Virus record (IMG/VR): IMGVR_UViG_3300025009_000050 | Span: 180,053-244,052 of that record | Length of the DNA: 64,000 bases | Reading direction: 5' to 3' (one strand) | Shown here: positions 46,528 through 62,998 of the stretch, in pieces | Layout: every line of letters begins with the position of its first letter | How positions within the stretch are numbered: the first letter of the stretch is position 1 | Made by a program: the position numbers and the translations under genes | The notes under the pieces: model-generated | What the model was told of the DNA's origin: nothing | Database searches by the model: none | The model's input: the letters and a program-made list of their open reading frames with translations, nothing else

Positions 46528-46625
46528 CATATTAAGTTAATTGTGACATACTAATACGATTATCTCTATATAGGGAAATACCGTATTAGTATAACACATT
46601 AGTAATTAGTATAACACATTAAGAT

Positions 46626-46790
46626 ATCCTAGTTGCTTTGATTTAAGGCCCGTACAGTAGCTAATTTTCACTTCAGGACTCGTAATACCTGAAGTGGAGT
46701 TAGCTCATGCTGTAGGGCATCCTGGTGAGAATTAAGGGCATTGTGAGCTAAGCCTTCGGCTATATCATAGGCTTTCAGCTACAATAGGAT
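46626..46790 (+). ncRNA. Candidate structured ncRNA
   Basis: Long G-U-containing hairpins 46648-46718 and 46740-46785; closing stem atccta/taggat. Confidence 0.45.
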
Positions 46791-47028
46791 TTGAATGCGG
46801 CACTAGTGTATATGTGTGTATATATTTATGATGTGCACTTATAGTCTTATATATAGCATAAGGAGGTGATATAATGTTACAAACTGTTGTACTAATAATA
46901 ATAGCAGTCATTCTATGGAAGATACTCTGTAAGATGTAATGTTAGTCCCTATATAGGGAGAAATCTGAGAATTATCTGACAATTCCTATATAGGGAAGAT
47001 ATTAATATAAATATATAGGGGTGATAGC

Positions 47029-47253
47029 ATATATAGTATAACTAGTAAGTGTCCATACTATAATGATGGTATGTGCAATAGAAAGTGTAGGGCATTACTA
47101 AACTATAAGGGAGAAATAGTATATACACTTAAAGATATGATTATAGAGGACTATCATATATATAAGTGCTGTATAAACTGTGCTGACCTTAGTAATGGGT
47201 GCCATTGCCTCAGGATTGGTGATAAATTGATTGAGATTAGAAATACTCTCTAA
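47029..47253 (+). CDS. 8-Cys miniprotein family member 1 (probable ATA start)
   Basis: IYSITSKCPYYNDGMCNRKC...CCINCADLSNGCHC. Confidence 0.65.
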   Translation: MYSITSKCPYYNDGMCNRKCRALLNYKGEIVYTLKDMIIEDYHIYKCCINCADLSNGCHCLRIGDKLIEIRNTL

Positions 47254-47435
47254 ATGAGAGGGAGATACCCTGTAAGGCAATATGAAGCTCTGTCCGGTGA
47301 TAAGTGGCCATAAGTAGTCCTGTGCCCTATATAGAGGAGAAAATATATAGTTATCTAGGCTATATAGTAGATATATAGTATGAGAGATATGGCCTTAGTT
47401 CTAATGGGTGCATGAATAGTTACAGGAGGTATATA

Positions 47436-47630
47436 ATGCACAGTATCTACAATGTAACTAATAAGTGTATATGGTATGATAACGGTATGTGTAAGTTTAT
47501 GTGTAGTATACCATATGGTAAATACGAAGGTATGGCATTTGAGGATAGTCCTGCTCCATGTTGTATAAATTGCGTTCATCTCAGTTACAGGTGTTGTTGC
47601 CAAAAAATAAGATTTGTGATACAGCATTAG
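47436..47630 (+). CDS. 8-Cys miniprotein family member 2
   Basis: CIWYDNGMCKFMC...CCINCVHLSYRCCC; SD aggaggt. Confidence 0.7.
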   Translation: MHSIYNVTNKCIWYDNGMCKFMCSIPYGKYEGMAFEDSPAPCCINCVHLSYRCCCQKIRFVIQH

Positions 47631-47845
47631 GAGGAATGTAACATAGCAGATACACTGGCGTACGTCATAATGATTATAGCATTACTAATAATGATAGGCC
47701 CACTTATTGTATCACTAGTATGTAAGGGAAAGATTAGTAATGAGCAGCTTATACGTATGTATGATTGTATTATGTGCTCCATTATCATTCTGATAGTAAC
47801 TATGATTATATTCTGTATAATATACGATACGGGAGGAGTGATATA

Positions 47846-47989
47846 ATGGAATATGATAAGAATTGTGAGACTAGTATACCTATGAAAGACGAATGTAAAG
47901 ACACTAAACCAAAGTGTTGTAGGAAATGTACCATAGATTGTAGCGAACCATGTGATGCATGGTATGAAGAATGTTTTGGGCCAGATTAG
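47846..47989 (+). CDS. Small Cys-rich protein
   Basis: MEYDKNC...KCCRKCTIDCSEPC; SD ggaggagtga. Confidence 0.5.
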   Translation: MEYDKNCETSIPMKDECKDTKPKCCRKCTIDCSEPCDAWYEECFGPD

Positions 47990-48022
47990 TTGTCTACATT
48001 CTAATCACTAGGAAGTGATATC

Positions 48023-48151
48023 ATAGATGTATTTAACATAGTGACTAAATGTACTAGCTTCAAGAACGGTATATGTAATAGAAATTGTTGTGGCTGCAGC
48101 ACCAAAGATATGGGAGGATACAATCTATCCATTGTGTACAGGCAATGGTAA
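48023..48151 (+). CDS. Truncated 8-Cys family member 3 (ATA start)
   Basis: IDVFNIVTKCTSFKNGICNRNCCGC. Confidence 0.45.
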   Translation: MDVFNIVTKCTSFKNGICNRNCCGCSTKDMGGYNLSIVYRQW

Positions 48152-48219
48152 TGAAAAATGTAAGACATGCTCACTATGGATAGATTTAGATTATAATAGG
48201 TATGAATAGGAGGTCCATC

Positions 48220-48774
48220 ATGCTTAAAATAGGCAAATTCAATGGTTGCGGAAATTGTCCTGCATGCAAACATGATAGTTGTGTAGGTAAGGAAATCCCA
48301 GTTACTATTACATTCATTAAGGATGAGTATGCCGATAACTGTGGTAGATTCGTGGTAGTATTCAGAAAGGGCGAGAAAGTAAAGGCTATGGCCCGTGTTC
48401 TGGATGACACTATCCACTGTGTAACTGCTGAGAGCAATATATACAATGGATATTCAGATTATGTGTCCTTAGACAATGTTGTTGTCGTTGGATGTAATAT
48501 AGAGTACATTGCAAGCATCTACCAACAGCCTATGATGTTTAGTGATTATCAATTAGTGTATACGGATAAGGGTGAATTCACGCCTAATCCTGATAATTAC
48601 CCGACTGAGGAACTGGCAGAACACTTATTCACTAAATTTAATGTATATCGTCCTGATGACTATAGGGGAAGATCCATGTCTGTAGGAGATATCATTAAGG
48701 TTACGATGACTGATGGCTCGTGTACACTCAGTGATGTGTTCATTGTTCAGTTATCTGGATTCATAAAGCTATAA
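48220..48774 (+). CDS. Protein with C-terminal YodL-like domain
   Basis: LAEHLFTKFNVYRPDDYRGRSMSVGDII. Confidence 0.7.
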   Translation: MLKIGKFNGCGNCPACKHDSCVGKEIPVTITFIKDEYADNCGRFVVVFRKGEKVKAMARVLDDTIHCVTAESNIYNGYSDYVSLDNVVVVGCNIEYIASIYQQPMMFSDYQLVYTDKGEFTPNPDNYPTEELAEHLFTKFNVYRPDDYRGRSMSVGDIIKVTMTDGSCTLSDVFIVQLSGFIKL

Positions 48775-48983
48775 TGTATGACATAACTAGTAGGTGTGTC
48801 TACTTTAAAAATGGTATGTGTCGTCTACCATGTATGAAAACGTTACTTGGTACGACTACAATAAAGTATAGTGGCCATGCATCTGATATGTATGAGTATA
48901 AATGCTGCGCTAATTGTGTGAACGTTAGCGCAGATTGTGGATGTTATAAAATGAGATTACACATGAGGAATAGTAATGTATGA
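48774..48983 (+). CDS. 8-Cys miniprotein family member 4
   Basis: CVYFKNGMCRLPC...CCANCVNVSADCGC. Confidence 0.7.
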   Translation: MYDITSRCVYFKNGMCRLPCMKTLLGTTTIKYSGHASDMYEYKCCANCVNVSADCGCYKMRLHMRNSNV

Positions 48984-49182
48984 CATAACTAGTAAATGCC
49001 CATACTTCTATGATGGAAGCTGTAGAATGCCTTGTAAAACTATTTGCGGCATAACATTAAAATCTTATTCTCGTAGAAGTGATAAGCATAGATATAAATG
49101 TTGTATTAATTGCGCAAGTCTCAGTTATAGATGTGGTTGCGCTTATCTAAGGGAGGCGTGTGGATGGATAAAGCAAGAGTGA
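48976..49182 (+). CDS. 8-Cys miniprotein family member 5
   Basis: CPYFYDGSCRMPC...CCINCASLSYRCGC. Confidence 0.7.
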   Translation: MYDITSKCPYFYDGSCRMPCKTICGITLKSYSRRSDKHRYKCCINCASLSYRCGCAYLREACGWIKQE

Positions 49183-49700
49183 TTACTACACTGAGGTGTG
49201 ATAGGAAGTGTCCTAACTGCTCAACTACCGATATGATTGGTAGGGCAAAACTCATTTCAAATCCAAATGATCTCCTAGATTATAAGGAGATCATTATCAC
49301 AGGTGGTGAGCCTTGTAAGATACCTAAAAATATATTAGAATTTGTACAACGGCTCAATGATGTAAAATACAATGGTAAGGTTTATCTCTATAGTGCATTG
49401 TATAATAATGAGCTTAGAGATTTCTATAAAGTAATATTCAGATACATTCACGGACTACACTATACAGTCCATTATGAATCCACTGACGCTGATATTGTTG
49501 CTTTAAAACAACTGTCAGAAGTTCTTATTCAGTACTGCCCAGATTATATTTCATTACGTTTATCAATTGACAGTAGATTGTATGATAAGTATGACTTTAG
49601 TAATATTAACTTTAATGGGTGGTCAGTGGTCAGGAAACTACAGTGGAAGGAACACTGTCCATTGCCGCCTGGTGAAGAGTTACTACTTTATTTTTTATAA
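49164..49700 (+). CDS. Minimal radical SAM protein
   Basis: CDRKCPNC (CxxxCxxC) and ITGGEP. Confidence 0.75.
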   Translation: MDKARVITTLRCDRKCPNCSTTDMIGRAKLISNPNDLLDYKEIIITGGEPCKIPKNILEFVQRLNDVKYNGKVYLYSALYNNELRDFYKVIFRYIHGLHYTVHYESTDADIVALKQLSEVLIQYCPDYISLRLSIDSRLYDKYDFSNINFNGWSVVRKLQWKEHCPLPPGEELLLYFL

Positions 49701-49981
49701 GGAAGAAGTGTTAGATATGTTTATATTGATTTTAGAGATATTGCTTACAGTAACAATTACTGCATCCATAGTAACTTTCCTATTACATCAATTTGGGATG
49801 TTAAAGGAAAAATTATTCAATATTGCAGTCATAACATGTGCAGGTTCATTTGTATTCATAACTGGGTTATTAATGATTTTTGGAGATTAGTTATGCCACA
49901 AGTATGGTTAGAGTCCCGAAGTAGTTGATGGTCTATGCACTAATTGTAGCTTTGAGAATTTAGTCCAAGGAGGAATATGCA

Positions 49982-50557
49982 ATGAGCGCAACAACATTGA
50001 TTGAAGACGTTCATAGTGGCTGGTTTAGTAAAGCAGTAGCTGCTAAGATTAAGGTCATGACAGATAATCCTGTAATGCCATATACTAATATTGCGTGGCA
50101 AGTACAAGGAACTCAGGAATACATGATGAAAGCTTATGCTGAACTTATTGAGGATTACATACCTGAATTATTGGCTCAGGTTCCATTGCCTGAAGGATTC
50201 AGGTATAGGTCTTATACTGGTCAAGGAGAACATGGCTATATTGCTGCTGTCATCCTTGAATGGACTCCTAACTTCTATAAAATTAACTGCAAGTACCACA
50301 TGATACATGAGACTTTAATTCATGAGTTAAGTGGTATCTACGCAGGAACTAGTCCTGAAAATGCATTGCAAGGCTTGCACAATTGGTGCAGTCATGCATA
50401 CACCATTGTTGAAGCTAAGATTATTGAAAAACTGAAGAAGAAACAGCTCAGATGGTATGGGCTAGTTCGATATACCAAAAATGGAGTCTATGGATATCAT
50501 GATAGCTATAAGTGTTATGATATGCACAATATCTTCAATCGTAAGAAAGGAGCATAA
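49982..50557 (+). CDS. Hypothetical protein
   Basis: SD aaggagg. Confidence 0.6.
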   Translation: MSATTLIEDVHSGWFSKAVAAKIKVMTDNPVMPYTNIAWQVQGTQEYMMKAYAELIEDYIPELLAQVPLPEGFRYRSYTGQGEHGYIAAVILEWTPNFYKINCKYHMIHETLIHELSGIYAGTSPENALQGLHNWCSHAYTIVEAKIIEKLKKKQLRWYGLVRYTKNGVYGYHDSYKCYDMHNIFNRKKGA

Positions 50558-50742
50558 TGTTAGATACGCTAACTATGTTATTGGTAATAAGCTTTGTAAT
50601 AACATTAATGATGTGGACATTATCAATGTGTAATATAATTGAAGATAAGTATTACGAATGCAGTAGTAATATCACATTAGTATTATTGTTAATACAGGCT
50701 TTAGTATTTATGGTGATAGCATTCAAAGGTATTGTAACATGA
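50557..50742 (+). CDS. Small two-TM membrane protein
   Basis: Two hydrophobic segments. Confidence 0.5.
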   Translation: MLDTLTMLLVISFVITLMMWTLSMCNIIEDKYYECSSNITLVLLLIQALVFMVIAFKGIVT

Positions 50743-50815
50743 CATTTGGCACTATATTACAGATCTAAGTTGCTATATACCATATATTGGTAATTGTTAA
50801 CCTCCTCTATAATAT

Positions 50816-50894
50816 GCTATCCCTGCTCATCTGGGCAATGAGCAGTGGTGGTAATATTATAATGCCCGCAGGAGCAATATCCTGCACCATTAGC
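50816..50894 (+). ncRNA. Candidate pseudoknotted small RNA/leader
   Basis: Stems ctgctcat/atgagcag, tggt/acca, gcagga/tcctgc; loop gggca is complementary to tgccc. Confidence 0.4.
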
Positions 50895-50929
50895 TATTAA
50901 AAAATGTAGCTAGTGTATAAGGAGGTAGT

Positions 50930-51490
50930 ATGAAAGGATATATGTTTAAAACCTTGACCGAGCTTGAGAAGAAAGCTATGTTGACTGGTGTGCTAATTAA
51001 GCGCACTGGTGGTAGACTTGATAAGCTTAGGATTGAGTCTGTCATTAATAATCTTGATATTAATATCCAATATGGCATTAAGGTATTTGAAGATGCCAAG
51101 GAATTTGGGAAGGCAATAACTTTACCTAACCACATAATGGAACATTCATGGGCAGGTAGTAAAGAACATATAGGCCAAGGTATTAACTTGCTTGGTACAG
51201 ATCTTGTATTCGGTGAGAGTAAGACATATGAATATAGTGGTAATGGTAATATCACTAAGGATGAGAAAGAAATGACATTACCAGATTTTGGCATGCTTGA
51301 TATTCATGCTGTCTATGTGTTCGAGCATAATAAGAGCACATACGAAGGTAATGAGTATGACAATAAGTATAACCATATCTATGTATATCTACCAAGTGGT
51401 AATCCGTTCATCATGAATCCAGATGTTGAATATATCCTTGCTAACTTTGACCTCAGTAAACCTAAACTTGGGTTCGTGGGGGTGGAATAA
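50930..51490 (+). CDS. Hypothetical protein
   Basis: SD aaggaggt. Confidence 0.6.
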   Translation: MKGYMFKTLTELEKKAMLTGVLIKRTGGRLDKLRIESVINNLDINIQYGIKVFEDAKEFGKAITLPNHIMEHSWAGSKEHIGQGINLLGTDLVFGESKTYEYSGNGNITKDEKEMTLPDFGMLDIHAVYVFEHNKSTYEGNEYDNKYNHIYVYLPSGNPFIMNPDVEYILANFDLSKPKLGFVGVE

Positions 51491-51798
51491 TTGCCTTTTA
51501 TATCTAATGGTTTCGAAGCTGTGGTGTTTGGTGGTAGAGACACTCAGCTTCGAATTAAAGTAGACCCGTATCTTGATGTAAATCTAAGTCCAGAAGACAC
51601 ACAGGCATTTATGGCCTACTTATCTAGGTAAATGCCTCACCCAATAATTGAAGGTGAGATAACAAAATTACTGACTGAGATAGTCAATATAATGCCAGAG
51701 ACTAAAGGTTCTAGTATTAGTGCTACAATTGCTAGGACTAAAGTTGATATTCTGTTAGATGTCATAAAAGACCTTAACAGAATATACGGAGGAGAATT

Positions 51799-52092
51799 AT
51801 GAGACAGTTATTCGGAGACTTATTGAATAACTACATAGCATCAGAGAATGCAGACATCTATGATGATGCAGATCTTGTGCAACTGAGTATTGAAGTTAAG
51901 AAGTACCGCGATAAATATGACGACATCATCGGAGGTTGTCGTTATGCTGTAAGAGTACTGAAGGCTGAGAGGAAAGCCCTTATTTCTATCATACGTGGCT
52001 TTGTTGTTGCTGATAAGCATGATAATATGGAGGCTCGGCTTAATGCCCTCAGACAAGTGAACAAAGCTCTCAGATTACTGCAGGGAAGATAA
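51799..52092 (+). CDS. Hypothetical helical protein
   Basis: SD ggagg. Confidence 0.55.
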   Translation: MRQLFGDLLNNYIASENADIYDDADLVQLSIEVKKYRDKYDDIIGGCRYAVRVLKAERKALISIIRGFVVADKHDNMEARLNALRQVNKALRLLQGR

Positions 52093-52095
52093 GGG

Positions 52096-52368
52096 GTGAT
52101 AGTTATGGTTTGTGGTAAAACTAATAGATTAGTTAATCCTGAAGAATGCCATAGTTGTGATCAATTCGTTATAAATGACAAAGCTAGAAGTAAGTTTGAT
52201 GTGTTTAATACGATATGTAAGATGGAAGATCAAATTAAATATGATCCTGAAGTTTGTGCTAATTGTGCTGATAATCTGGAGCCATGCAATTGTTCCTACT
52301 CTTATCATGCTGCTTATACAAGACATTGTAAATCCTGCAATGGTTGTAAGACGAAGAGCTGCAAATGA
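52096..52368 (+). CDS. Cys-rich hypothetical protein
   Basis: Multiple CxxC motifs. Confidence 0.5.
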   Translation: MIVMVCGKTNRLVNPEECHSCDQFVINDKARSKFDVFNTICKMEDQIKYDPEVCANCADNLEPCNCSYSYHAAYTRHCKSCNGCKTKSCK

Positions 52369-52569
52369 ATAATCTGCGTAGAAGGAGTGACTAATATAAT
52401 GCGTCGTTCTACATATTGCTATAAACCTATGCTACGGGATTTTTGTAGGGATTGTGCCTTCTATCTGACTAGCGTAAATAAATGCACAAAGTGTAAAGGC
52501 TTAACTAAGCCTTTTAACCTTGCCTGCAGGAAGTTTAAAGCAGGATATAAGAAAAGGAAATAGTTAGAG

Positions 52570-53025
52570 GTGACATCTATGCGCTATAAGAATGATCGGC
52601 ATCGTATGTTCACAATATTATGCTACCTGTATCACTATCCTGGTGATGAAGGCATAGGTGGTATAAGAGCTGATTTACATAATGGTCATTGGAGAGCTGG
52701 TACTAGATTACGTGCTCCATGGGGACCGTTATGGGGAATGAATAAGAGTAAGAGGCTATCGTATCTTAATAAGTTAGTTGAAACTGATTGTCTACTAACT
52801 GATGGATCAGATTATGTAGTTACCGAGTATGGTCTGTCTCTACTCAAGAGATATCCTTACAGGCTCGTAGACTATGTAACATGGTACAAGCATATGGGTA
52901 CTGGAAAAATGAGTAGATCCAGTAGATATGCATACTGCGATCCAAATAAGATAATTTCCTTAGTGCAAGCTATATTGCCTGGATCTAACTATGGCATTAG
53001 TATATCAAAGATATACGACTTATAG
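52570..53025 (+). CDS. Putative winged-helix DNA-binding protein
   Basis: YLNKLVETDCL...YVVTEYGLSLL wing motif. Confidence 0.45.
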   Translation: MTSMRYKNDRHRMFTILCYLYHYPGDEGIGGIRADLHNGHWRAGTRLRAPWGPLWGMNKSKRLSYLNKLVETDCLLTDGSDYVVTEYGLSLLKRYPYRLVDYVTWYKHMGTGKMSRSSRYAYCDPNKIISLVQAILPGSNYGISISKIYDL

Positions 53026-53036
53026 GAGGCAAAATT

Positions 53037-53228
53037 ATGAATAACATATCACTTATAGTAAGCTCATTCGTTATTTTTATAACGACACAAATCTTATTCT
53101 ATAAGACTTTTGAAGAAAGGAATATTAATATCCCAGCGCTTGGATTATATGTATCTTCATTTGTGGTATTCGTTATGTCTCTAGCATACTTCATATGCGA
53201 TAATATCATTATATATATTACGAGGTGA
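53037..53228 (+). CDS. Small membrane protein
   Basis: Two TM segments; SD aggagg. Confidence 0.5.
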   Translation: MNNISLIVSSFVIFITTQILFYKTFEERNINIPALGLYVSSFVVFVMSLAYFICDNIIIYITR

Positions 53229-53232
53229 TATA

Positions 53233-53598
53233 ATGCTACAAGTATTACTGATTATAGAAGCCCTAGTGATCATCACACTATTTGCATTAATTAGTATATG
53301 CATACAATTAGACAGATATAAGCCTTGCCCTAAGTGGTTAAAGTTATCTCTTGGTATAATGGCTGCGCTACCATTCTCTATAACTATAGCCATTGGCATT
53401 ATAGAGAATGCATACACAGTAACAATAGTATTTATTCTCTTAATCATAAATATGGCAGCATCTATGTGTGCTGCCGGATATCTTATAGATAGAAAACGTG
53501 AGCCGCATACTTCATTGGCAGCTAATATAGTAATATCTCTCATCATCTTAGCTATACAAGCAATATATATAACACTGAATGCGCTTGAGAAGATATGA
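53233..53598 (+). CDS. Four-TM membrane protein
   Basis: Hydrophobicity; SD gaggtga. Confidence 0.55.
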   Translation: MLQVLLIIEALVIITLFALISICIQLDRYKPCPKWLKLSLGIMAALPFSITIAIGIIENAYTVTIVFILLIINMAASMCAAGYLIDRKREPHTSLAANIVISLIILAIQAIYITLNALEKI

Positions 53599-53906
53599 GA
53601 GTATTATTACTTTCAGCATTGATACTATTGGTATATTGGATTTATAGAATACATCATCCTAAATTGCCTTCACATGAAGTTGGAAAATGTGAAAGCTTTT
53701 CTAATGGAATGTGTATATACAAGTGCATGAGTATTGGAGGTGTTGGGCTCAAGAATCGTATACATGTATATGATGCAGATTGGATTCATAGTATATTAAA
53801 TGGGCATATCAAGAATGAATTTGCATGCTGCATTAATTGTGCTGAATTCGGACCTGAATGTGCTTGTCTTTTCTTACGATATAAATTTGAGGAGGGTAAT
53901 GCATGA
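53595..53906 (+). CDS. 8-Cys family member 6 with N-terminal membrane anchor
   Basis: CESFSNGMCIYKC...CCINCAEFGPECAC. Confidence 0.7.
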   Translation: MRVLLLSALILLVYWIYRIHHPKLPSHEVGKCESFSNGMCIYKCMSIGGVGLKNRIHVYDADWIHSILNGHIKNEFACCINCAEFGPECACLFLRYKFEEGNA

Positions 53907-54169
53907 GAGTGCTATATATAATACTGCTTATATTATTATGCACAGGATGCGCTCCTATACATACTGATGTAGTTAAAATATATGATGCTAAGGAGTTTGA
54001 TTACGACTGTTCTCGTTCCTACTCTATCTATGTATTAATAGAAGGTAGGAAAGTAGAATATATAGTGGGTAAAGCAATGTACCTTAAAGCTCTTAATGCT
54101 AATGAGGCTAGGGTTACATATAACTTTGAAAATGGCATTGTAACCCCACGTGATATTGGAGTGAGATAA
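53903..54169 (+). CDS. Putative lipoprotein
   Basis: MRVLYIILLILLCTGC lipobox-like. Confidence 0.55.
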   Translation: MRVLYIILLILLCTGCAPIHTDVVKIYDAKEFDYDCSRSYSIYVLIEGRKVEYIVGKAMYLKALNANEARVTYNFENGIVTPRDIGVR

Positions 54170-54369
54170 TGGAAGTTGCAGTATGCCCTAAGTGTGATAA
54201 GATTAATATACTAGATAAATGGGATGAATCTACTAAGTATACATTCGGTGGAGTAGTATCTATAACTAATAAAATTAGTGTGCTTTTATATGTATGTCCT
54301 AATTGTGGAAAGTTTGTTCATCTCTACAGTATTATATTTATTGATATTACTAAGGAGGTAAAATGTTAA
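54169..54369 (+). CDS. Zinc-ribbon protein, tandem family 1/3
   Basis: CPKC..WD..T..YVCPNC. Confidence 0.65.
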   Translation: MEVAVCPKCDKINILDKWDESTKYTFGGVVSITNKISVLLYVCPNCGKFVHLYSIIFIDITKEVKC

Positions 54370-54578
54370 CTATTGATGCAGCTATTTGCCCAAGGTGTGA
54401 TAAGATGAGCACCTTTGGTGAATGGGATAATGGAACTCTTAAATATTATAATAGAATAGTGTCCATGACAGATTTAAAGAATAGGAATGGTTGCTATTAT
54501 CATTGTCCTCATTGTGGGAAAAAGTCTGAATTTGTTCAACTTATATTAACAAAGTTGAACATAAAGCTGAAGAGATGA
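54363..54578 (+). CDS. Zinc-ribbon protein, tandem family 2/3
   Basis: CPRC..WD..T..YHCPHC. Confidence 0.65.
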   Translation: MLTIDAAICPRCDKMSTFGEWDNGTLKYYNRIVSMTDLKNRNGCYYHCPHCGKKSEFVQLILTKLNIKLKR

Positions 54579-54769
54579 TTAAACATATATGTCCCAAATG
54601 TGATGCTATAAATTCTGAGGAAGAATGGGATAAGGCTACTACCAAATTCTTTGGTCAGATTACTAGTATTACTGATAAACTACGCAGAAATCTATATGTA
54701 TATATGTGCCCTTATTGTAAGGGTATAGTTCGGTATATGAAATTAATAGAATTGGAGGATAATGAATGA
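54575..54769 (+). CDS. Zinc-ribbon protein, tandem family 3/3
   Basis: CPKC..WD..T..YMCPYC. Confidence 0.65.
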   Translation: MIKHICPKCDAINSEEEWDKATTKFFGQITSITDKLRRNLYVYMCPYCKGIVRYMKLIELEDNE

Positions 54770-54909
54770 AATGTCCGGTTTGCGGGTACGAAGGTACGGT
54801 GTATGATTTCATTCATATTATTGGAGATTTTGAAGCATACATAAACCAGAGTATGGTGCCCGTAACATTGTATGCTTGTCCCAAGTGTAAAATTATAATA
54901 ATGGATTAA
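54766..54909 (+). CDS. Small zinc-ribbon protein (47 aa)
   Basis: MKCPVCG...LYACPKC; not in ORF track. Confidence 0.55.
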   Translation: MKCPVCGYEGTVYDFIHIIGDFEAYINQSMVPVTLYACPKCKIIIMD

Positions 54910-54918
54910 GGAGGTAAT

Positions 54919-55461
54919 ATGATGCCAGCTAAGATTGAAAAGTTAATACATGGTGAAACTGTATTCCGAGGAAAAAGGATGGCCGTAAGAGTTGATAAAG
55001 TGCAAGTGGATGATTGTAAGCCTACAATAAGAGAGGTCGTTGAATCTTGTAATGCTGTAGCTATATTAGGTATCGACAAGAGTAACAATATGATCTTTAT
55101 CAGGCAGTATAGGCATGCTGTAGGAAGAATACTTCTAGAACTTCCAGCTGGTAAGATAGATCCAGGCGAATCTAAATATATGGCTGGTCTAAGGGAATTC
55201 AAGGAGGAAACTGGATATACTGCTGGTAGCATTGAGACTCTACTTTCTGGTTTAAGTTCACCAGGATTCTTAACTGAGAATATACATATACTACTTGCAA
55301 CCGATCTCACTGAAGGCAATCCAGAGCCCACAGAGAATGAGAACATAGAAGTAGTCGGGATTCCAATTCCCGATGTATTGGGTAAGATAGATAGTGGTGA
55401 GATCAGCTGCCTCAAATCTATTGCAGCTGTATATGCTTATATGGTAAAAGTTCTTTCATAA
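54919..55461 (+). CDS. nudF: ADP-ribose pyrophosphatase (Nudix)
   Basis: IRQYRHAVG, LELPAGKIDPGE...REFKEETGY Nudix box, SSPGF. Confidence 0.85.
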   Translation: MMPAKIEKLIHGETVFRGKRMAVRVDKVQVDDCKPTIREVVESCNAVAILGIDKSNNMIFIRQYRHAVGRILLELPAGKIDPGESKYMAGLREFKEETGYTAGSIETLLSGLSSPGFLTENIHILLATDLTEGNPEPTENENIEVVGIPIPDVLGKIDSGEISCLKSIAAVYAYMVKVLS

Positions 55462-55641
55462 CTGGAGGTTAATATGTGTTTCTTATGCCTATGCCAGCAC
55501 CTATAATTAAACCGCCGGATATCTCTATTGTTACTCCACCTTCAATAGTAGAGTTAGTGATATTTTATGGGATGATAGGATCGCTATTTATTGCAGTACT
55601 AGTATCTCTATATATATTCATCATTACTTATAGGAGGTAAG

Positions 55642-55812
55642 GTGTATAATTTAGTTAAAAACTGTGGATTCTTCAGTAATGGAATATGTAAATCAGCACC
55701 ATGTTCTAAAACAGGCGATAAGTTTTGCTGTATAAATTGCTCTAAGTTAAGTGCTGACTGCTCTTGTGCAACATTAAGTAGAAGAATAAAGGAGTTAGAT
55801 AACAATGGGTAG
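55642..55812 (+). CDS. 8-Cys family member 7 (56 aa)
   Basis: SD aggaggt, GTG start; CGFFSNGICKSAPC..CCINCSKLSADCSC; not in ORF track. Confidence 0.7.
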   Translation: MYNLVKNCGFFSNGICKSAPCSKTGDKFCCINCSKLSADCSCATLSRRIKELDNNG

Positions 55813-55975
55813 GTGTGTTAGTTGTGGAACTAAGGTCAACAGAGAAGAGAACATGGAAATGCTTGAGGACATATTTGAATCTGTTGACCTGTGTGGTGTT
55901 GAGTCACTACCTGAAGATGCACAGGTTGTCTATGAGGATAAGATGTGCTGGCAATGTTATGAGAAGAGGTGTTAA
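55805..55975 (+). CDS. Small treble-clef-like Zn-finger protein
   Basis: MGRCVSCG...MCWQCYE; SD aaggag. Confidence 0.55.
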   Translation: MGRCVSCGTKVNREENMEMLEDIFESVDLCGVESLPEDAQVVYEDKMCWQCYEKRC

Positions 55976-56029
55976 TTTACTGCTCTCACCTCTTTTCATG
56001 AGAGGTGTATGGAGTAAATTATAGGAGGA

Positions 56030-56383
56030 ATGCTAATGTTTGATGTAAAGGTATTTCAGTTTATACTAACTAATGATAAAATTCTACTTGTTGAAGCAGA
56101 CAGCATATCTGAAGCTTTCCAGGATCAACAGTTGTGGAATTTACGTGCAACTGAAATAAAAGATTTCAAACAGTTGAATTACCTCGAATTAAAAGATAAA
56201 ATAATTTATGCAGCAGACGATGTTGGTATTTTTAAAGTTCAGAATACTAATTTTATTGAAGTTATTAGAAATATTCCTAATTTGAAACAGCGTGATATCA
56301 TTACATGGGAATATGCAAGACATAAACGCATGTATAGAGTTATGATATTCAATACTCATATTATACTTACCACAGCTAATTAG
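56030..56383 (+). CDS. Hypothetical protein
   Basis: SD aggagg. Confidence 0.55.
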   Translation: MLMFDVKVFQFILTNDKILLVEADSISEAFQDQQLWNLRATEIKDFKQLNYLELKDKIIYAADDVGIFKVQNTNFIEVIRNIPNLKQRDIITWEYARHKRMYRVMIFNTHIILTTAN

Positions 56384-56394
56384 GAGGGTGCAAT

Positions 56395-56970
56395 ATGCAA
56401 TATGTTAGTTTGGAAGATAATACTTTAGATCTACAAACTGGCTCAAGAGTCTTCTCAAACTTTATATTTGACTACTTATTTAAGTATAAAGTATATCTAT
56501 TTCAATCCATAGTTGTCATTTGCATAGGAACTGACCGTTCCACAGGTGACAGCTTAGGACCGTTAACTGGACATATACTGAGCTCAATGGATAATGAGTT
56601 CCACTTGTATGGAACATTAGATAAGCCAGTTGGTGCAAGTGATTTAGAAGAAACAATTGAGATAATTAATGCTAATCACCCAGGTGCATTCATAATTGCT
56701 ATTGATGCTTGTCTTGGCAAATCAGAGAATATAGGACATGTACGCATAGAAGATGGCCCTATACACCCTGGATCTGGTGTAAATAAGAAATTACCTCCCG
56801 TAGGATGCATTCATATTATTGGAATAGTAAATGTAGCTGGCTATATGGAATACCTTGTTTTACAAAATACCAGATTGAATATTGTAATGAAGATGGCTAA
56901 CATCATAGCTCCTGCATTGAATTCAGCTATCAGTAGATATAATTTACTAATCAGTAAAACTGCTGTATAA
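56395..56970 (+). CDS. yyaC: Spore protease YyaC (GPR-like)
   Basis: CIGTDRSTGDSLGPLTG, YGTLDKPV, IAIDACLG, PGSGVNKKLPPVG, LQNTRL. Confidence 0.9.
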   Translation: MQYVSLEDNTLDLQTGSRVFSNFIFDYLFKYKVYLFQSIVVICIGTDRSTGDSLGPLTGHILSSMDNEFHLYGTLDKPVGASDLEETIEIINANHPGAFIIAIDACLGKSENIGHVRIEDGPIHPGSGVNKKLPPVGCIHIIGIVNVAGYMEYLVLQNTRLNIVMKMANIIAPALNSAISRYNLLISKTAV

Positions 56971-56971
56971 T
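56943..56971 (+). promoter_or_regulatory. SigA-like promoter for the tRNA-like RNA
   Basis: TTTACT-N17-TATAAT; predicted +1 about 56978. Confidence 0.5.
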
Positions 56972-56977
56972 GAGCTT

Positions 56978-57069
56978 GGGGCCAGCTTAGCCCCGCCAGA
57001 GGAGGAGAGCCTGGGTTCGAATCCCAGTAGCACTGATCATGCTATAGCCAAGTGGTCCAAGGCGCCTCC
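56978..57069 (+). ncRNA. Circularly permuted tRNA-like RNA (YrlA/Y-RNA-like)
   Basis: GGAGG - T-arm CTGGG TTCGAAT CCCAG - TAGCA ctgatca TGCTA - TA - D-arm GCC AAGTGGTCCAA GGC - G - CCTCC. Confidence 0.75.
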
Positions 57070-57093
57070 ATGACTTTATCAAGGAGTGGTTAT

Positions 57094-57492
57094 ATGCAAT
57101 TCATAGTTTGTGCTTGTAGTAAGAATGTTGATACTAGAGCAGTTGATCTTCCTAATATAGAAGTTGGATTAAAACTGCTGGGTGAACTGAGAAAGGCAGC
57201 AGGTAAGGATCTTGATATCTCAGTTATTAAGTCGTATGTAAATTCTTATTCTGAATATAGAGTTGAAATTGCAATTCCTGAAAAACTTGCTATTCAGTGC
57301 AATGATCTATTCAATGATAAGAATATTGTATATATTAAGGTTCCAGATAAGCATCTTAATCAATATGCAAGTATTGTCCCAATTATAGATCTAGAAGGTG
57401 ATATCCCTTCTGCTCACATGGAGTACCATCTTGATGGAGATAAATTCATTAAGGATTGGATGGAGGCAGGATGTCCGACAACATTACTATAA
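57094..57492 (+). CDS. Hypothetical protein
   Basis: SD aaggag before ATG 57094. Confidence 0.55.
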   Translation: MQFIVCACSKNVDTRAVDLPNIEVGLKLLGELRKAAGKDLDISVIKSYVNSYSEYRVEIAIPEKLAIQCNDLFNDKNIVYIKVPDKHLNQYASIVPIIDLEGDIPSAHMEYHLDGDKFIKDWMEAGCPTTLL

Positions 57493-57701
57493 TTGAATGC
57501 ACTGAATTCAAAGATGGGATGTGCAGTATAATGTGCCCCAGATTAAAGAGAAAGATATTGCACGAAGAAGTAGAACCTAACGCGGATTTAATGGTATGCT
57601 GCATAAACTGCTCTCAACTTGAAGCAGATTGTAATTGTGGTACAATTAGAAGTTGCATCAGGAATGGAGTGAAGTTCTTTGTTACACATTCGAACAGCTG
57701 A
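57471..57701 (+). CDS. 8-Cys family member 8
   Basis: CTEFKDGMCSIMC...CCINCSQLEADCNC. Confidence 0.7.
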   Translation: MSDNITIIECTEFKDGMCSIMCPRLKRKILHEEVEPNADLMVCCINCSQLEADCNCGTIRSCIRNGVKFFVTHSNS

Positions 57702-58020
57702 TATGAGTTATAACGGACTTAGTGGTCTTGATATAACAAGAAAGACAGCTGATATAACTGGTGATGAGACATTCGCTCCTAGTTGGAAAATTGTACGTGA
57801 TCATCAACAAGGTAAGATAACTGATGACCAGTACATAGAAGTCTATTATAAGATGATGCTCGATTCACAGATTAAGTATGCTGATAGGTGGAAGTGGCTA
57901 CTAGATCAGAATTATATAGTTCTTAAGTGCTTCTGTAAGAAGAATAAATTCTGTCATAGAATAGTATTAGCCCTGATACTTAAGAGCTTAGGGGCTAAAT
58001 ACTTAGGAGAAGTTGCATGA
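57679..58020 (+). CDS. DUF488/YeaO-like protein
   Basis: DITRK, FAPSW, LKCFC....CHR. Confidence 0.65.
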   Translation: MLHIRTADMSYNGLSGLDITRKTADITGDETFAPSWKIVRDHQQGKITDDQYIEVYYKMMLDSQIKYADRWKWLLDQNYIVLKCFCKKNKFCHRIVLALILKSLGAKYLGEVA

Positions 58021-58202
58021 GTGTATTAAAATGTGAGAATTATGTAGAAGGATATTGTACAAAACATTGTAATACAATTAATCTAGATTGCACAGTAAAC
58101 AACAGAAAGGTTCATTCAATTTGTTGCTTAAATTGTGCTTTAAGAAATAAAAGTTGCTACTGCTCTACAGTAGCAAACCTAGTTGAAATATGGCTTTGCT
58201 AG
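58017..58202 (+). CDS. 8-Cys family member 9
   Basis: CENYVEGYCTKHC...CCLNCALRNKSCYC. Confidence 0.7.
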   Translation: MSVLKCENYVEGYCTKHCNTINLDCTVNNRKVHSICCLNCALRNKSCYCSTVANLVEIWLC

Positions 58203-58331: not shown

Positions 58332-58366
58332 AGGTGGTAGTCTCCTCTACCACCTATTCTTTTTTT
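58332..58366 (+). terminator. Rho-independent terminator
   Basis: aggtggtag-tctcct-ctaccacct followed by a T-tract. Confidence 0.7.
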
Positions 58367-59572: not shown

Positions 59573-60106
59573 TTGCCACCAAGTCTTAGTGAATTGTTAA
59601 AATTCCTAGGTAATGCCAAGACAGTGAATATTGGATTACTCAGACGTAAGTATAATGCTGAGCAAAACTATGAACTATATAAAGGTAGGCTTGAGGAAGC
59701 CTTTGAAGTATACAGCAAGGAAGAAGCTATAATGGAAGGTCTTAAAGCTCGCTATGAACGTAAAGTTGAGGAACTTAAAGCATACGGTAAAACTCTTCAA
59801 GAGAAATATGCTGAATATGAGCGAGCTGCTGATACGTTAGATGAGATCGATAATGAAATTCTGATGGCTAATGGTAGACCTAAAGTAGAAGCACCTAAAC
59901 CTAAGCCTAAGCCTCGTAAGAAAATGACTGTAGCTGAAGCCTTTGCTGTAATGGAACTGCAACAAACCAGGGACATGAACGTTATCCGTAGTAAATATCG
60001 TGACCTGGCTAAAGTTCTTCACCCTGATAGGAAAGATACAGGGAGTGAGGTAAAGTTTAAAGTTCTCAACGAAGCCCATACTATAATAAAGGAGTGGGCG
60101 GAATGA
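59573..60106 (+). CDS. Coiled-coil protein with C-terminal J-domain
   Basis: IRSKYRDLAKVLHPDR...FKVLNEAH. Confidence 0.8.
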   Translation: MPPSLSELLKFLGNAKTVNIGLLRRKYNAEQNYELYKGRLEEAFEVYSKEEAIMEGLKARYERKVEELKAYGKTLQEKYAEYERAADTLDEIDNEILMANGRPKVEAPKPKPKPRKKMTVAEAFAVMELQQTRDMNVIRSKYRDLAKVLHPDRKDTGSEVKFKVLNEAHTIIKEWAE

Positions 60107-60663
60107 GTATATTAAAGTTCTGGTATACACTGTTCTTTAAATCCAAGTCAACCAAGATAAATGTTATTGGTAATGAGCTTGGTAGTGACGCAAATAATGC
60201 CTCTCTTATGATCTTCCTTTCGTCTATAGTAGTATCTTATGTACTTTATGATATCTTATTCTCACTGCTATCTCTCACAGCATTAATTCATGAAATCATT
60301 GTATTATACATCATACGTAAATATCGTCTTTATTATTCCAACATACAAATGATTGAAAGACAAGAAGTAACAAAAGAGGCCATAAAGGAATGGGCCAAGA
60401 AGATACACGAGGAACGTGCTAAGCTTGCTCAAGAAAAATTAAGTACTACTCAGAGGAATAACCTGATTAGTAAGACAGTTGAGGATTGGCTAGTAGTTCT
60501 AAATCTTGAACCTAAAGTCAGTAGTCTTAATCTAAAGATGATTAAGGATAGGTACTGGAAACTAGCTCAACGTTATCATCCGGACAATAAGGACACTGGT
60601 GATCATGATAGATTTGCAGAGATCAACCAGGCTTATCATAATTTAAATTCATTATTGAGGTGA
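60094..60663 (+). CDS. Membrane-anchored J-domain protein
   Basis: TM segments; IKDRYWKLAQRYHPDN...FAEINQAY. Confidence 0.8.
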   Translation: MGGMSILKFWYTLFFKSKSTKINVIGNELGSDANNASLMIFLSSIVVSYVLYDILFSLLSLTALIHEIIVLYIIRKYRLYYSNIQMIERQEVTKEAIKEWAKKIHEERAKLAQEKLSTTQRNNLISKTVEDWLVVLNLEPKVSSLNLKMIKDRYWKLAQRYHPDNKDTGDHDRFAEINQAYHNLNSLLR

Positions 60664-62557: not shown

Positions 62558-62998
62558 ATGTTAATTGACATATCAGGTAATCTATTAACTTCTGACTGTA
62601 ATATTATGCTTCATCAAGTTAATTCCTGTGGTAAATTTGCATCAGGTATAGCTGGTCAGATAAGAGAGATGTTTCCCCAAGTTTACCTAGACTATATGAC
62701 CGCTTACAGAAATGGTAGACTTACCTTAGGAAACATAGTAATTACTTACCTACCTAAATTAACATTTGTAAGTATGTGTGCTCAAGCTACTTATGGTAGG
62801 ACAGGTAAGCACACAAATGAAGAAGCATTCAGATTATGCTGCAATAGAGTAAAGCTGTTGATTGATTCTACACCAGGTAAGAAAGTTGGTGTTCCTTGTG
62901 GCATAGGGTGTGGGCTAGGCGGGGCATCATGGTCAGTTATAAGGAACATCATAGATGAAGTGTTTAGGGAGAACACAATCCACATCTATAAGAAATAA
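62558..62998 (+). CDS. Macrodomain ADP-ribosylhydrolase (TARG1/DarG-like)
   Basis: GNLL....IMLHQVNSCGKFASGIA, AQ..YG, PCGIGCGLGGASW. Confidence 0.85.
   Translation: MLIDISGNLLTSDCNIMLHQVNSCGKFASGIAGQIREMFPQVYLDYMTAYRNGRLTLGNIVITYLPKLTFVSMCAQATYGRTGKHTNEEAFRLCCNRVKLLIDSTPGKKVGVPCGIGCGLGGASWSVIRNIIDEVFRENTIHIYKK

What the first reader, a model, noticed from the sequence alone, without database searches (positions are those of the whole stretch)
47029..58202. Dispersed family of nine 8-cysteine miniproteins: fixed metal scaffold with a hypervariable loop
Seen: consensus C-x7-C-x3(4)-C-x(variable)-CC-x-NC-x6-C-x-C, usually with [FY]..G before the second Cys. Members are at 47029, 47436, 48023 (truncated), 48774, 48976, 53595 (membrane-anchored), 55642, 57471 and 58017; two are absent from the ORF track. 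The Cys spacing is almost invariant, while the middle loop varies from 7 to about 30 aa with little sequence similarity. Inference: an expanded, diversifying binder/inhibitor repertoire (e.g. anti-defence) or Zn/Fe-S sequestering proteins. Copies are interspersed next to radical SAM, Nudix and DUF488 genes. I recognise no named family.
Basis: partly seen in the sequence, partly recalled or inferred. Interest (0 to 1): 0.75.

Follow-up and report, generated by a model that had tools for sequence, protein, structure and literature searches.

The report
Orphan eight-cysteine miniprotein family, jumbo phage
A 244-kb uncultured groundwater phage carries eight full copies and one half copy of a tiny protein with eight invariant cysteines; no relative was found in any public collection searched, it probably folds around bound metal, and its function is still unknown.

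Summary
Eight full copies and one N-terminal remnant of C-x7-C-x3/4-C-loop-CC-x-N-C-x6-C-x-C lie at 47.0-58.2 kb and nowhere else in the 244,052-bp phage genome. All eight Cys, one Gly and one Asn are invariant. Synonymous sites are saturated and TGT/TGC alternate at every Cys position, so these are old paralogues kept by selection on the protein.

No Pfam, PHROG, PADLOC or PDB family matches. An exhaustive HMM search of 1.84 billion representative proteins returned only the phage's own eight proteins. Ten related phages and scans of viral, metagenome and genome contigs gave nothing. AlphaFold models are poor (pLDDT about 55), and Foldseek found no match.

The genes lie in a lineage-specific accessory arm. 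It also encodes Nudix, Macro, NAPRTase-like, DUF488, YodL-like and YyaC-like proteins, two J-domain proteins and a small radical SAM.

My best reading, at low confidence (0.35), is a cytoplasmic metal-stapled mini-scaffold, probably with two Zn(Cys)4 sites. It would display a variable loop and act as a set of small binders during host takeover. Metal binding, expression and targets are all untested.

The "hypervariable loop" is overstated: the non-Cys scaffold positions are almost as diverged. It is a new orphan family of a familiar kind.

The parts
47029..47253 (+). m1: 74-codon full 8-Cys copy, loop 26 aa. ATA occupies the SD-spaced start position, and the first ATG (47071) would delete Cys1.
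   Evidence: HMM E 6e-24
47436..47630 (+). m2: 64-aa full copy, loop 18 aa. An alternative in-frame ATG lies at 47412.
   Evidence: HMM E 7.5e-22
48023..48151 (+). m3: N-terminal half only (C-x7-C-x3-C, then CGC and a stop). ATA at 48023 follows an SD; GTG at 48041. It is either a remnant or a half-domain gene.
   Evidence: HMM E 1e-4 and 9e-6
48774..48983 (+). m4: 69-aa full copy, loop 23 aa. Its start overlaps the stop of the YodL-like gene.
   Evidence: HMM E 1.4e-24
48976..49182 (+). m5: 68-aa full copy, loop 21 aa. It overlaps m4 by 8 nt, and its 3' end overlaps the start of the radical SAM gene.
   Evidence: HMM E 2.3e-25
53595..53906 (+). m6: 103-aa copy with an N-terminal hydrophobic anchor (residues 3-17) and the longest loop (33 aa). 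It sits between a multi-TM ORF and a lipoprotein-like ORF.
55642..55812 (+). m7: 56-aa minimal copy with a GTG start, a 7-aa loop, and x4 spacing between Cys2 and Cys3.
57471..57701 (+). m8: 76-aa copy, the only acidic one (pI 5.5). It overlaps the upstream 146-aa ORF and the downstream DUF488 gene.
58017..58202 (+). m9: 61-aa copy, the most divergent. Its start overlaps the DUF488 stop, and a terminator-like hairpin follows at 58332-58355.
49164..49700 (+). Context: a small (178 aa) radical SAM with CxxxCxxC and no SPASM domain, phrog_31524. It is 27-30% identical to the 'HxsC-like' rSAM of crAss-like phages.
52096..52368 (+). Possible distant relative: a 90-aa Cys-rich ORF containing V-C-A-N-C-x6-C-x-C. 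It is not significant against the family profile.
   Evidence: (repeat D4)
46528..47411 (.). Intergenic regions flanking m1. They hold five of the genome's sixteen CTATATAG palindromes and a strong hairpin at 46636-46737. This is possibly the control region of the cluster.

Best explanation
The nine ORFs are an old, lineage-restricted paralogue family of a jumbo myophage whose host is probably a spore-forming member of the Bacillota. Each encodes a 45-60-residue cytoplasmic mini-domain whose fold is held together by metal bound to eight invariant cysteines. The most likely arrangement is two Zn(Cys)4 sites.

Inferred architecture:
- Cys1 and Cys2 face each other across a beta-hairpin closed by the invariant [ND]-G turn.
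- Cys5-x2-Cys6 sit at the N-terminus of helix 1, giving a treble-clef-like first site.
- Cys3 and Cys4 flank the variable insert. Together with Cys7-x-Cys8, in the turn before helix 2, they would staple the base of the loop.

On this model the insert (7-33 aa) and the C-terminal helix are the variable surfaces. The paralogues would then be a set of small binders or inhibitors aimed at different host or phage macromolecules during host takeover or counter-defence, with one copy (m6) tethered to the membrane.

Shown here: the family, its invariants, protein-level purifying selection, its restriction to this phage, and its accessory-arm context. Inferred only: metal binding, ligand pairing, binder function and targets.
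For: - There are eight full copies and one half copy, found nowhere else in the genome.
- The 8 Cys, Gly and Asn are invariant. All 64 Cys cells are kept while TGT/TGC alternate at every position. Scaffold pS is 0.79 (saturated) against pN 0.39.
- Two independent AF2 runs give the same secondary structure: a hairpin at the NG turn, a helix starting at CCxNC, and a second helix after CxC.
- Seven of eight copies have no signal peptide.
- Loop length ranges from 7 to 33 aa, with near-random loop sequence outside the m1/m4/m5 group.
- The + strand arm at 36-62 kb has no counterpart in the closest complete relative, although the structural module is syntenic.
- The arm carries an ADP-sugar Nudix, Macro, NAPRTase-like, DUF488, J-domain, YodL-like and YyaC-like genes.
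- Most copies have their own Shine-Dalgarno sequence.
Against: - There is no experimental or homology-based evidence for any function.
- AF2 confidence is low (pLDDT 55-56), and Foldseek finds nothing.
- The spacings C-x7-C-x3-C and CC-x2-C-x6-C-x-C match no catalogued zinc-finger or Fe-S motif, so Zn versus Fe-S versus Cu is open.
- Non-Cys scaffold positions are nearly as diverged as the loop (0.25 vs 0.15 identity). The data fit relaxed constraint everywhere except the ligands, not targeted loop diversification.
- The phage has other small paralogue families that are not Cys-rich, so copy number alone is not special.
- Expression is not shown.
- Two copies lack a canonical start codon.
Confidence: 0.35

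Rival explanations
1. They are small zinc-finger nucleic-acid-binding proteins that act as transcriptional or translational regulators of phage or host genes. The C-terminal helices and basic loops would contact DNA or RNA.
For: - Seven of eight copies have pI 7.6-9.0.
- An Arg/Lys is kept 4-5 residues after Cys8 in seven of eight copies.
- The CC(C)INC-x2-[FL]-x3-CxC motif recurs in giant-virus Cys-rich proteins, one of which is fused to GIY-YIG and a CCHC knuckle.
- Palindromic CTATATAG sites cluster around m1/m2.
Against: - Eight long-retained paralogues, one of them membrane-anchored and one acidic (pI 5.5), are unusual for regulators.
- There is no similarity to any DNA-binding family.
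- The giant-virus resemblance is limited to the 23 columns that the search pattern itself selected.
Confidence: 0.2
2. They are iron-sulfur or other redox/metal-handling miniproteins: ferredoxin-like electron carriers, in-trans auxiliary-cluster partners of the adjacent small radical SAM, or metallothionein-like buffers.
For: - Eight invariant Cys include CC and CxC doublets.
- m7 has a weak Metallothio_6 hit (18.1 bits, below the cutoff of 23).
- The host lives in groundwater that is plausibly anoxic.
- The end of m5 overlaps the start of a 178-aa radical SAM that lacks a SPASM/twitch domain.
Against: - The spacing matches no known Fe-S, SPASM or metallothionein pattern, and there is no Pfam hit at E<=1 for seven of eight copies.
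- Only two of nine copies lie next to the rSAM.
- The rSAM's homologues in crAss-like phages sit in nucleotide-metabolism modules without such partners.
- Variable loops and eight diverged copies are not expected for a carrier or a buffer.
Confidence: 0.15
3. They are precursor peptides of a radical-SAM-modified natural product (RiPP-like), with many precursors for one maturase.
For: m4 and m5 lie immediately upstream of, and overlap, a radical SAM weakly similar to the peptide maturase HxsC (21.5 bits against a cutoff of 268). Multi-copy precursors with variable regions are known for other RiPPs (my own knowledge, e.g. prochlorosins).
Against: - The conserved parts flank the variable part on both sides; there is no leader/core layout.
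- The rSAM is minimal, without a SPASM domain or a peptide-recognition (RRE) domain.
- There are no protease or transporter genes.
- Most copies are kilobases away from the rSAM.
- Homologous rSAMs in other phages have no such neighbours.
Confidence: 0.05
4. They are disulfide-stabilised proteins acting outside the cytoplasm, in the virion or after lysis, like eukaryotic 8-Cys-motif proteins or knottins.
For: The only PDB profile matches are plant 2S albumins, through CC...CxC (E 0.14 and 1.9). A fixed Cys framework with variable loops is typical of secreted toxin scaffolds.
Against: - The E-values are at chance level, and the Cys order differs from the 8CM pattern.
- Seven of eight copies have no signal peptide.
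- The charge distribution of the m6 anchor favours a cytoplasmic domain.
- The genes lie far from, and on the opposite strand to, the structural module.
Confidence: 0.05

Closest known systems
Small zinc-ribbon / treble-clef zinc-finger proteins common in phage early and accessory regions (for example the four tandem CxxC...CPxC ORFs at 54169-54909 of this window)
   Same: They are of similar size (50-100 aa) and cytoplasmic, with Cys ligands as the only strongly conserved residues. They occur as multi-copy genes in accessory arms. The C-x2-C at a helix N-terminus after a beta-hairpin resembles a treble clef.
   Different: There are no paired CxxC knuckles. The N-terminal ligands are spaced C-x7-C-x3-C, there are eight ligands instead of four, and a variable insert sits between Cys3 and Cys4. 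There is no sequence or fold match.
Metallothioneins (Pfam PF05522 Metallothio_6; bacterial SmtA/BmtA)
   Same: Both are small and have high Cys content with CC and CxC doublets. One member (m7) gives a sub-threshold hit.
   Different: The hit scores 18.1 bits against a cutoff of 23, in one of eight members only. The family has conserved hydrophobic, Gly and Asn positions and predicted regular secondary structure. It also has long non-Cys inserts and eight diverged paralogues.
Giant-virus Cys-rich proteins carrying YWSDDCYGxCLxCCCINC-x2-F-x3-CxC (loci L013, L049, L051, L121)
   Same: They share an identical CCINC-x6-CxC core, with a hydrophobic residue at the same place and a C-x3-C just upstream.
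   Different: They were found by searching for that very motif. hhalign aligns only those 23 columns. They are parts of 145-250-aa multi-Cys proteins with CxxCxGxG-like elements, and they have no Pfam domain either. Homology is unproven.
Plant eight-cysteine-motif (8CM) proteins: 2S albumins, nsLTPs
   Same: Both have eight Cys including CC and CxC, with a helical C-terminal half. They are the top PDB profile hits.
   Different: The E-values are 0.14 and 1.9. The Cys order is C,C,C,CC,C,CxC here versus C,C,CC,CxC,C,C there. The plant proteins are secreted and disulfide-bonded, whereas these have no signal peptides.
SPASM/twitch auxiliary Fe-S domains of radical SAM enzymes
   Same: Both have seven or eight Cys in about 60 residues, including a Cys...Gly...Cys hairpin. 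Two copies lie next to a SPASM-less radical SAM.
   Different: The spacing differs from my recollection of the SPASM pattern (CX9-15GX4C...CX2CX5CX3C...C). These are free-standing ORFs, most are not adjacent to the rSAM, and there is no Pfam match.
Multigene small-protein families of large viruses (other paralogue families of this same phage)
   Same: They show the same genomic behaviour: dispersed or tandem copies in lineage-specific accessory regions, high divergence and no homologues.
   Different: Here the shared element is a strict eight-Cys framework, and this is the largest family in the genome.

Membership tests
Metallothionein (PF05522 and other Pfam MT families) | Score at or above the Pfam gathering threshold | tested here: not met
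   only m7 hits, at 18.1 bits against a cutoff of 23. The other seven have no family at E<=1.
Metallothionein | Binds multiple metal ions in thiolate clusters | not testable with these tools
   This needs ICP-MS or metal titration.
Zinc ribbon / classical Cys4 zinc fingers | Two CxxC (or CPxC) knuckles supplying four ligands | tested here: not met
   Alignment A1: the only C-x2-C is Cys5-Cys6, and the N-terminal ligands are C-x7-C-x3/4-C. There are no Pfam or PHROG zinc-finger hits.
SPASM/twitch domain | Pattern CX9-15GX4C-gap-CX2CX5CX3C-gap-C (recalled from memory), fused C-terminally to a radical SAM core | tested here: not met
   The spacing is different. The genes are separate ORFs, seven of nine copies are not adjacent to the rSAM, and there is no Pfam hit.
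Plant 8CM / 2S albumin superfamily | Pattern C...C...CC...CxC...C...C with significant sequence or fold similarity and a secretory signal | tested here: not met
   One search gives E 0.14 and 1.9. The Cys order differs, and there is no signal peptide in seven of eight copies.
rSAM-dependent RiPP precursors (SCIFF/ranthipeptide-like, Hxs system) | Leader-core precursor encoded beside a dedicated maturase with a peptide-recognition or SPASM domain | tested here: not met
   - The rSAM is 178 aa, core only, and scores 21.5 bits against a cutoff of 268 for HxsC.
- Its phage homologues lack Cys-rich neighbours.
- The conserved parts of the miniproteins flank the variable part on both sides.
Giant-virus CC(C)INC Cys-rich proteins | Profile-profile similarity extending beyond the motif used to find them | tested here: inconclusive
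   hhalign probability is 86% but covers only 23 columns, the selected motif. The exhaustive HMM search did not return these proteins.
Known anti-defence or defence protein families | Match to a catalogued model | tested here: not met
   PADLOC gives no hits for any member, and PHROGs gives none below E 0.007. No dedicated anti-defence library was available.

The most novel reading that the evidence does not exclude
The family is a previously unseen metal-stapled loop-display fold, a Zn2Cys8 mini-scaffold whose ligand spacing matches no catalogued zinc finger. On this reading the phage lineage duplicated it into a panel of small inhibitors, each loop neutralising a different host defence or takeover target. 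It would be a natural 'miniprotein binder library' in a bacterial virus.
Probability: 0.2. Interest if true: 0.75.

Novelty: new variant of a known kind. Interest (0 to 1): 0.45.

Why it matters
If the scaffold really binds two metals and displays a tolerant 7-33-residue insert, it would be a new minimal metal-binding fold and a compact natural framework for loop grafting.

If the paralogues hit different host targets, they would be a ready-made set of probes for the physiology or immunity of a poorly known groundwater member of the Bacillota.

The family also shows how much protein space is still unsampled. It consists of eight old, selected paralogues, yet there is not one relative among about 15 billion predicted proteins. 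Without a cultured host or any expression data it remains an ORFan family of unknown function, which limits its immediate value.

Tried and rejected
- **Family libraries.** Pfam, PHROGs and PADLOC scans of all members gave nothing usable.
- **Protein searches.** The word-indexed search of 5.8 billion proteins and the exhaustive hmmsearch of 1.84 billion representatives returned only the phage's own eight proteins. The one other hit was spurious: an actinobacterial repeat protein matched through 'YSYFTNGTC'.
- **DNA-pattern scan of IMG/VR for CCINC-x6-CxC.** It gave over 100 hits, nearly all non-coding or low-complexity chance matches. Four giant-virus proteins share the motif, but hhalign shows no similarity beyond it.
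- **Back-translated scans.** Scans of metagenome, genome and viral contigs with the four closest members found only the same phage.
- **Related phages.** HMM scans covered five cultured relatives (KLEB27-3, WH1, Edson, MTATph1, 0305phi8-36) and five uncultured ones. One of the uncultured ones is a complete 244,829-bp genome. None has the family.
- **Structure.** Two AF2 runs gave pLDDT 55-56. Foldseek against PDB, BFVD and AFDB clusters gave no matches. ESM Atlas scores were at most 0.83, which is noise level.
- **PDB profile search.** Only chance-level 2S albumin hits came back.
- **RiPP link.** The small rSAM's homologues in crAss-like phages have no Cys-rich partners.
- **dN/dS.** It is unusable because synonymous sites are saturated.
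- **Population variation.** The other contigs fetched are 99.4-100% identical (one 15-nt gap), and one SNP appeared across runs.
- **Expression.** The only RNA runs are tiny SOLiD libraries, and nothing was laid.
- **ORF 52096 as a tenth member.** It is not significant against the profile.
- **ATA as a general start codon.** There is no enrichment of SD-spaced ATA genome-wide.

Full report
**What the window is.** The window is the last 64 kb (180,053-244,052) of a 244,052-bp virus record rated 100% complete. The minus-strand half encodes tail sheath, major head protein, portal, prohead protease and large terminase.

The major head protein is 57-58% identical to those of Bacillus jumbo myophages vB_BauM_KLEB27-3, vB_BceM_WH1 and Edson. 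It is 44-48% identical to those of Moorella phage MTATph1 and Bacillus phage 0305phi8-36. The host is therefore most likely a member of the Bacillota. Phage-borne YodL-like and YyaC/DUF1256 (spore-protease-like) genes point the same way.

The same sequence occurs in JGI contig C687J13896_1000008 (244,136 bp) and in several groundwater metagenome runs.

**Checking the observation.** A regular-expression scan of all six frames of the whole genome finds C-x7-C-x3/4-C-x(5-60)-CC-x-N-C-x6-C-x-C exactly eight times. All eight are on the + strand between window 47,050 and 58,163. The N-terminal half alone occurs once more, at 48,050.

A profile built from the eight proteins (alignment A1) recovers these nine places with E from 2e-25 to 1e-4. 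The next-best frame in the genome has E 0.01. The invariant columns are the eight Cys, one Gly (the [ND]-G turn between Cys1 and Cys2) and one Asn (CC-x-N-C). The insert between Cys3 and Cys4 is 7, 17, 18, 20, 21, 23, 26 or 33 residues long.

Some details need correction:
- m1 has no ATG, GTG or TTG that would include Cys1. ATA lies exactly 7 nt after AGGGG, and the listed ORF from ATG 47071 would begin inside the domain.
- m3 likewise has ATA 7 nt after AGGAAG. It ends after C-x7-C-x3-C-C-x-C, and the other frame does not restore the C-terminal motif.
- SD-spaced ATA is not enriched genome-wide. These two cases are either rare non-canonical starts or recent start-codon losses.

**Are they real genes under selection?** Across the 28 pairs, a Nei-Gojobori count on 33 scaffold codons gives mean pS 0.79 (saturated) and mean pN 0.39. 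At each of the eight Cys positions TGT and TGC are both used among the copies, yet all 64 cells encode Cys.

The duplications are therefore old, and the cysteines have been kept by selection on the protein. Most copies have their own Shine-Dalgarno sequence or are start-stop coupled to neighbours. The first strong terminator-like hairpins downstream follow m9 at 58,332 and 58,939.

**How variable is the loop?** Mean pairwise identity is 0.41 over the 37-column scaffold, 0.25 over its non-Cys columns, and 0.15 in the loops. Shuffled loops give 0.129 +/- 0.009. Only m1, m4 and m5 keep recognisable loop similarity (0.24-0.41).

The loop is thus length-variable and almost randomised. The rest of the protein, apart from the ligands, is nearly as free. 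The data show a ligand-defined scaffold with little other constraint. They do not show directed diversification.

**Search for relatives.**
- No Pfam family matches at E<=1 for seven of eight members. m7 scores 18.1 bits to Metallothio_6, below the cutoff of 23.
- PHROGs and PADLOC give nothing usable.
- The word-indexed search of 5.8 billion clusters returned only the phage's own eight proteins.
- The exhaustive hmmsearch of 1.84 billion representatives returned the same eight plus one spurious repeat protein. The most divergent in-genome members score 54-56 bits (E about 1e-9) in that search. Relatives as distant as the paralogues are from each other would therefore have been seen.
- Back-translated scans of JGI metagenome contigs, 185,579 species genomes and IMG/VR found only the same phage.
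- Six-frame profile scans of five cultured and five uncultured relatives found no copy. One of the uncultured relatives is complete (244,829 bp, MCP 59% identical). That relative also has no comparable Cys-rich array.
- A DNA-pattern scan for CCINC-x6-CxC in IMG/VR yielded mostly chance hits. Four giant-virus Cys-rich proteins share CC(C)INC-x2-F-x3-CxC preceded by C-x3-C. Profile-profile comparison aligns only the 23 columns that the pattern selected. Those proteins have no Pfam domain over that stretch. I treat this as a shared short motif, not demonstrated homology.
- The PDB profile search gave only plant 2S albumins at E 0.14 and 1.9, through CC...CxC. That is chance level, and the Cys order is different.

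**Structure.** Two AlphaFold2 runs on the eight-sequence alignment, with m1 and then m7 as target, gave mean pLDDT of 54.8 and 55.9. Both predict the same secondary structure: a two-stranded hairpin around the NG turn, a helix starting at or just before CCxNC, and a second helix after CxC.

Foldseek against PDB, BFVD and AFDB clusters returned no matches. ESM Atlas feature scores were at most 0.83, within the range that shuffled proteins reach. The fold is therefore undetermined.

From the pattern alone I infer two tetrahedral sites:
- Cys1/Cys2 across the hairpin plus Cys5-x2-Cys6 at the helix N-terminus, which is treble-clef-like.
- Cys3/Cys4 at the two ends of the insert plus Cys7-x-Cys8.

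This arrangement would close the insert into a stapled loop. It is a model, not a result.

**Context.** The + strand arm from about 36 kb to 62 kb has no tblastn counterpart in the closest complete relative. The structural module, by contrast, is collinear at 25-59% identity. The family therefore sits in a lineage-specific accessory arm.

Recognisable genes in this arm are:
- a YodL-like protein (48202);
- a 178-aa radical SAM (49164; phrog_31524, E 3e-48);
- a NudE/ADP-ribose-pyrophosphatase-like Nudix (54919);
- YyaC/DUF1256 (56395);
- DUF488-N3a (57679);
- two J-domain proteins, a Macro domain protein and an NAPRTase-like protein further on.

The rSAM's nearest phage homologues (27-30% identity) are the 'HxsC-like' genes of crAss-like phages. 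There they lie among replication and nucleotide-metabolism genes, with no Cys-rich partner. The m5-rSAM overlap is therefore weak evidence for a functional link. Overlapping starts and stops are the rule throughout this arm.

The phage also has other small paralogue families that are not Cys-rich, with 7, 5 and 3 members. Multigene small families are a habit of this genome.

m6 carries an N-terminal hydrophobic segment. Its C-terminal flank is more positively charged than its N-terminal flank, which by the positive-inside rule puts the Cys domain in the cytoplasm. This is an inference from the sequence.

**Interpretation.** The invariant eight-Cys framework, the absence of export signals and the strong selection on ligands make a cytoplasmic metal-bound mini-domain the most economical reading. 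Eight long-retained copies with different inserts, one of them membrane-tethered, in a lineage-specific takeover or counter-defence arm fit a panel of small binders best. I put this at 0.35.

The rivals are:
- nucleic-acid-binding zinc fingers (0.2), supported by basic pI in seven of eight copies and a conserved Arg after Cys8;
- Fe-S, redox or metal-handling proteins, possibly linked to the rSAM (0.15);
- RiPP precursors (0.05);
- extracytoplasmic disulfide proteins (0.05).

Nothing here tests metal binding, expression or targets. The only RNA libraries from the site are 2-3 Mb SOLiD runs, and the one laid held nothing of the stretch. All other contigs of the phage fetched are 99.4-100% identical, and the runs show a single SNP, so there is no population signal.

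**Verdict.** This is a genuine, well-defined orphan protein family with an uncatalogued Cys spacing. Its existence is confirmed, but its function is unexplained. It belongs to a familiar kind of thing: small Cys-rich accessory proteins and multigene families of large phages. I rate it a new variant of a known kind, of moderate interest.

Noticed in passing
window 46528-47411: The intergenic regions around m1 hold 5 of the genome's 16 CTATATAG palindromes (T(C/T)CCTATATAGGGA at 46563, 46946, 46983; also 47327 and 47360). They also hold a tandem TTAGTATAACACATTA x2 at about 46586-46621. These look like operator or promoter elements of this gene cluster.
   Followed up: partly
window 46636-46737: A long near-perfect hairpin lies in the 350-nt gap before the cluster. 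The folded stretch 46636-46770 has RNA MFE -49.4 kcal/mol and z -4.2, and 0 of 200 shuffles fold as well. There is no Rfam match and no tRNA.
   Followed up: partly
window 47029 and 48023: Two family members have ATA exactly where ATG is expected, 7 nt after a good Shine-Dalgarno sequence. This is either non-canonical initiation or a recent G>A start loss. SD-spaced ATA is not enriched genome-wide.
   Followed up: partly
window 54169-54909: Four tandem, overlapping paralogous 47-71-aa zinc-ribbon ORFs (CPxC...W(D/E)...CPxCG) form a second Cys-based mini-family. Further Cys-rich ORFs lie at 47847-47989, 52096-52368, 52387-52563 and 55805-55975.
   Followed up: no
window 54919-55461, 57679-58020, 62558-62998, 63022-end: This is a set of genes for NAD/ADP-ribose handling: NudE/ADPR-pyrophosphatase-like Nudix, DUF488-N3a, Macro and NAPRTase-like. 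It resembles phage NAD+ salvage and counter-defence gene sets known from the literature. That comparison rests on my own knowledge and was not tested.
   Followed up: no
window 48202-48774 and 56395-56970: The phage carries sporulation-associated homologues: a YodL-like protein (E 6e-9) with an extra Cys-rich N-terminus (FNGCGNCPACKHDSC), and YyaC/DUF1256 (E 2e-58, GPR-protease-like). They suggest manipulation of a spore-forming host.
   Followed up: no
window 49164-49700: A minimal 178-aa radical SAM (phrog_31524) is shared at 27-30% identity with crAss-like and LoVEphage Bacteroides phages. There it is annotated 'HxsC-like' and sits in replication and nucleotide modules. Its function is unknown.
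   Followed up: partly
window 59573-60663: Two adjacent proteins have C-terminal J domains (DnaJ). They are presumably Hsp70 recruiters.
   Followed up: no
G000 genome 43.6-81.3 kb (outside the window): Other small paralogue families lie here. One has 7 members of 59-86 aa sharing 'TVDKIY...YFI'. One has 5 members starting 'MKIRTDFVTNSSSSS'. One has 3 members. A Cys_rich_VLP-looking ORF lies at 81305-81562.
   Followed up: no
loci L013, L049, L051, L121 (IMG/VR, some giant-virus MAGs): This is an uncharacterised giant-virus Cys-rich protein family with the conserved block CxACxGSGxSYWSDDCYGxCLxCCCINC-x6-CxC. In one case it is fused to GIY-YIG and a CCHC knuckle. There is no Pfam domain over the block.
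   Followed up: partly
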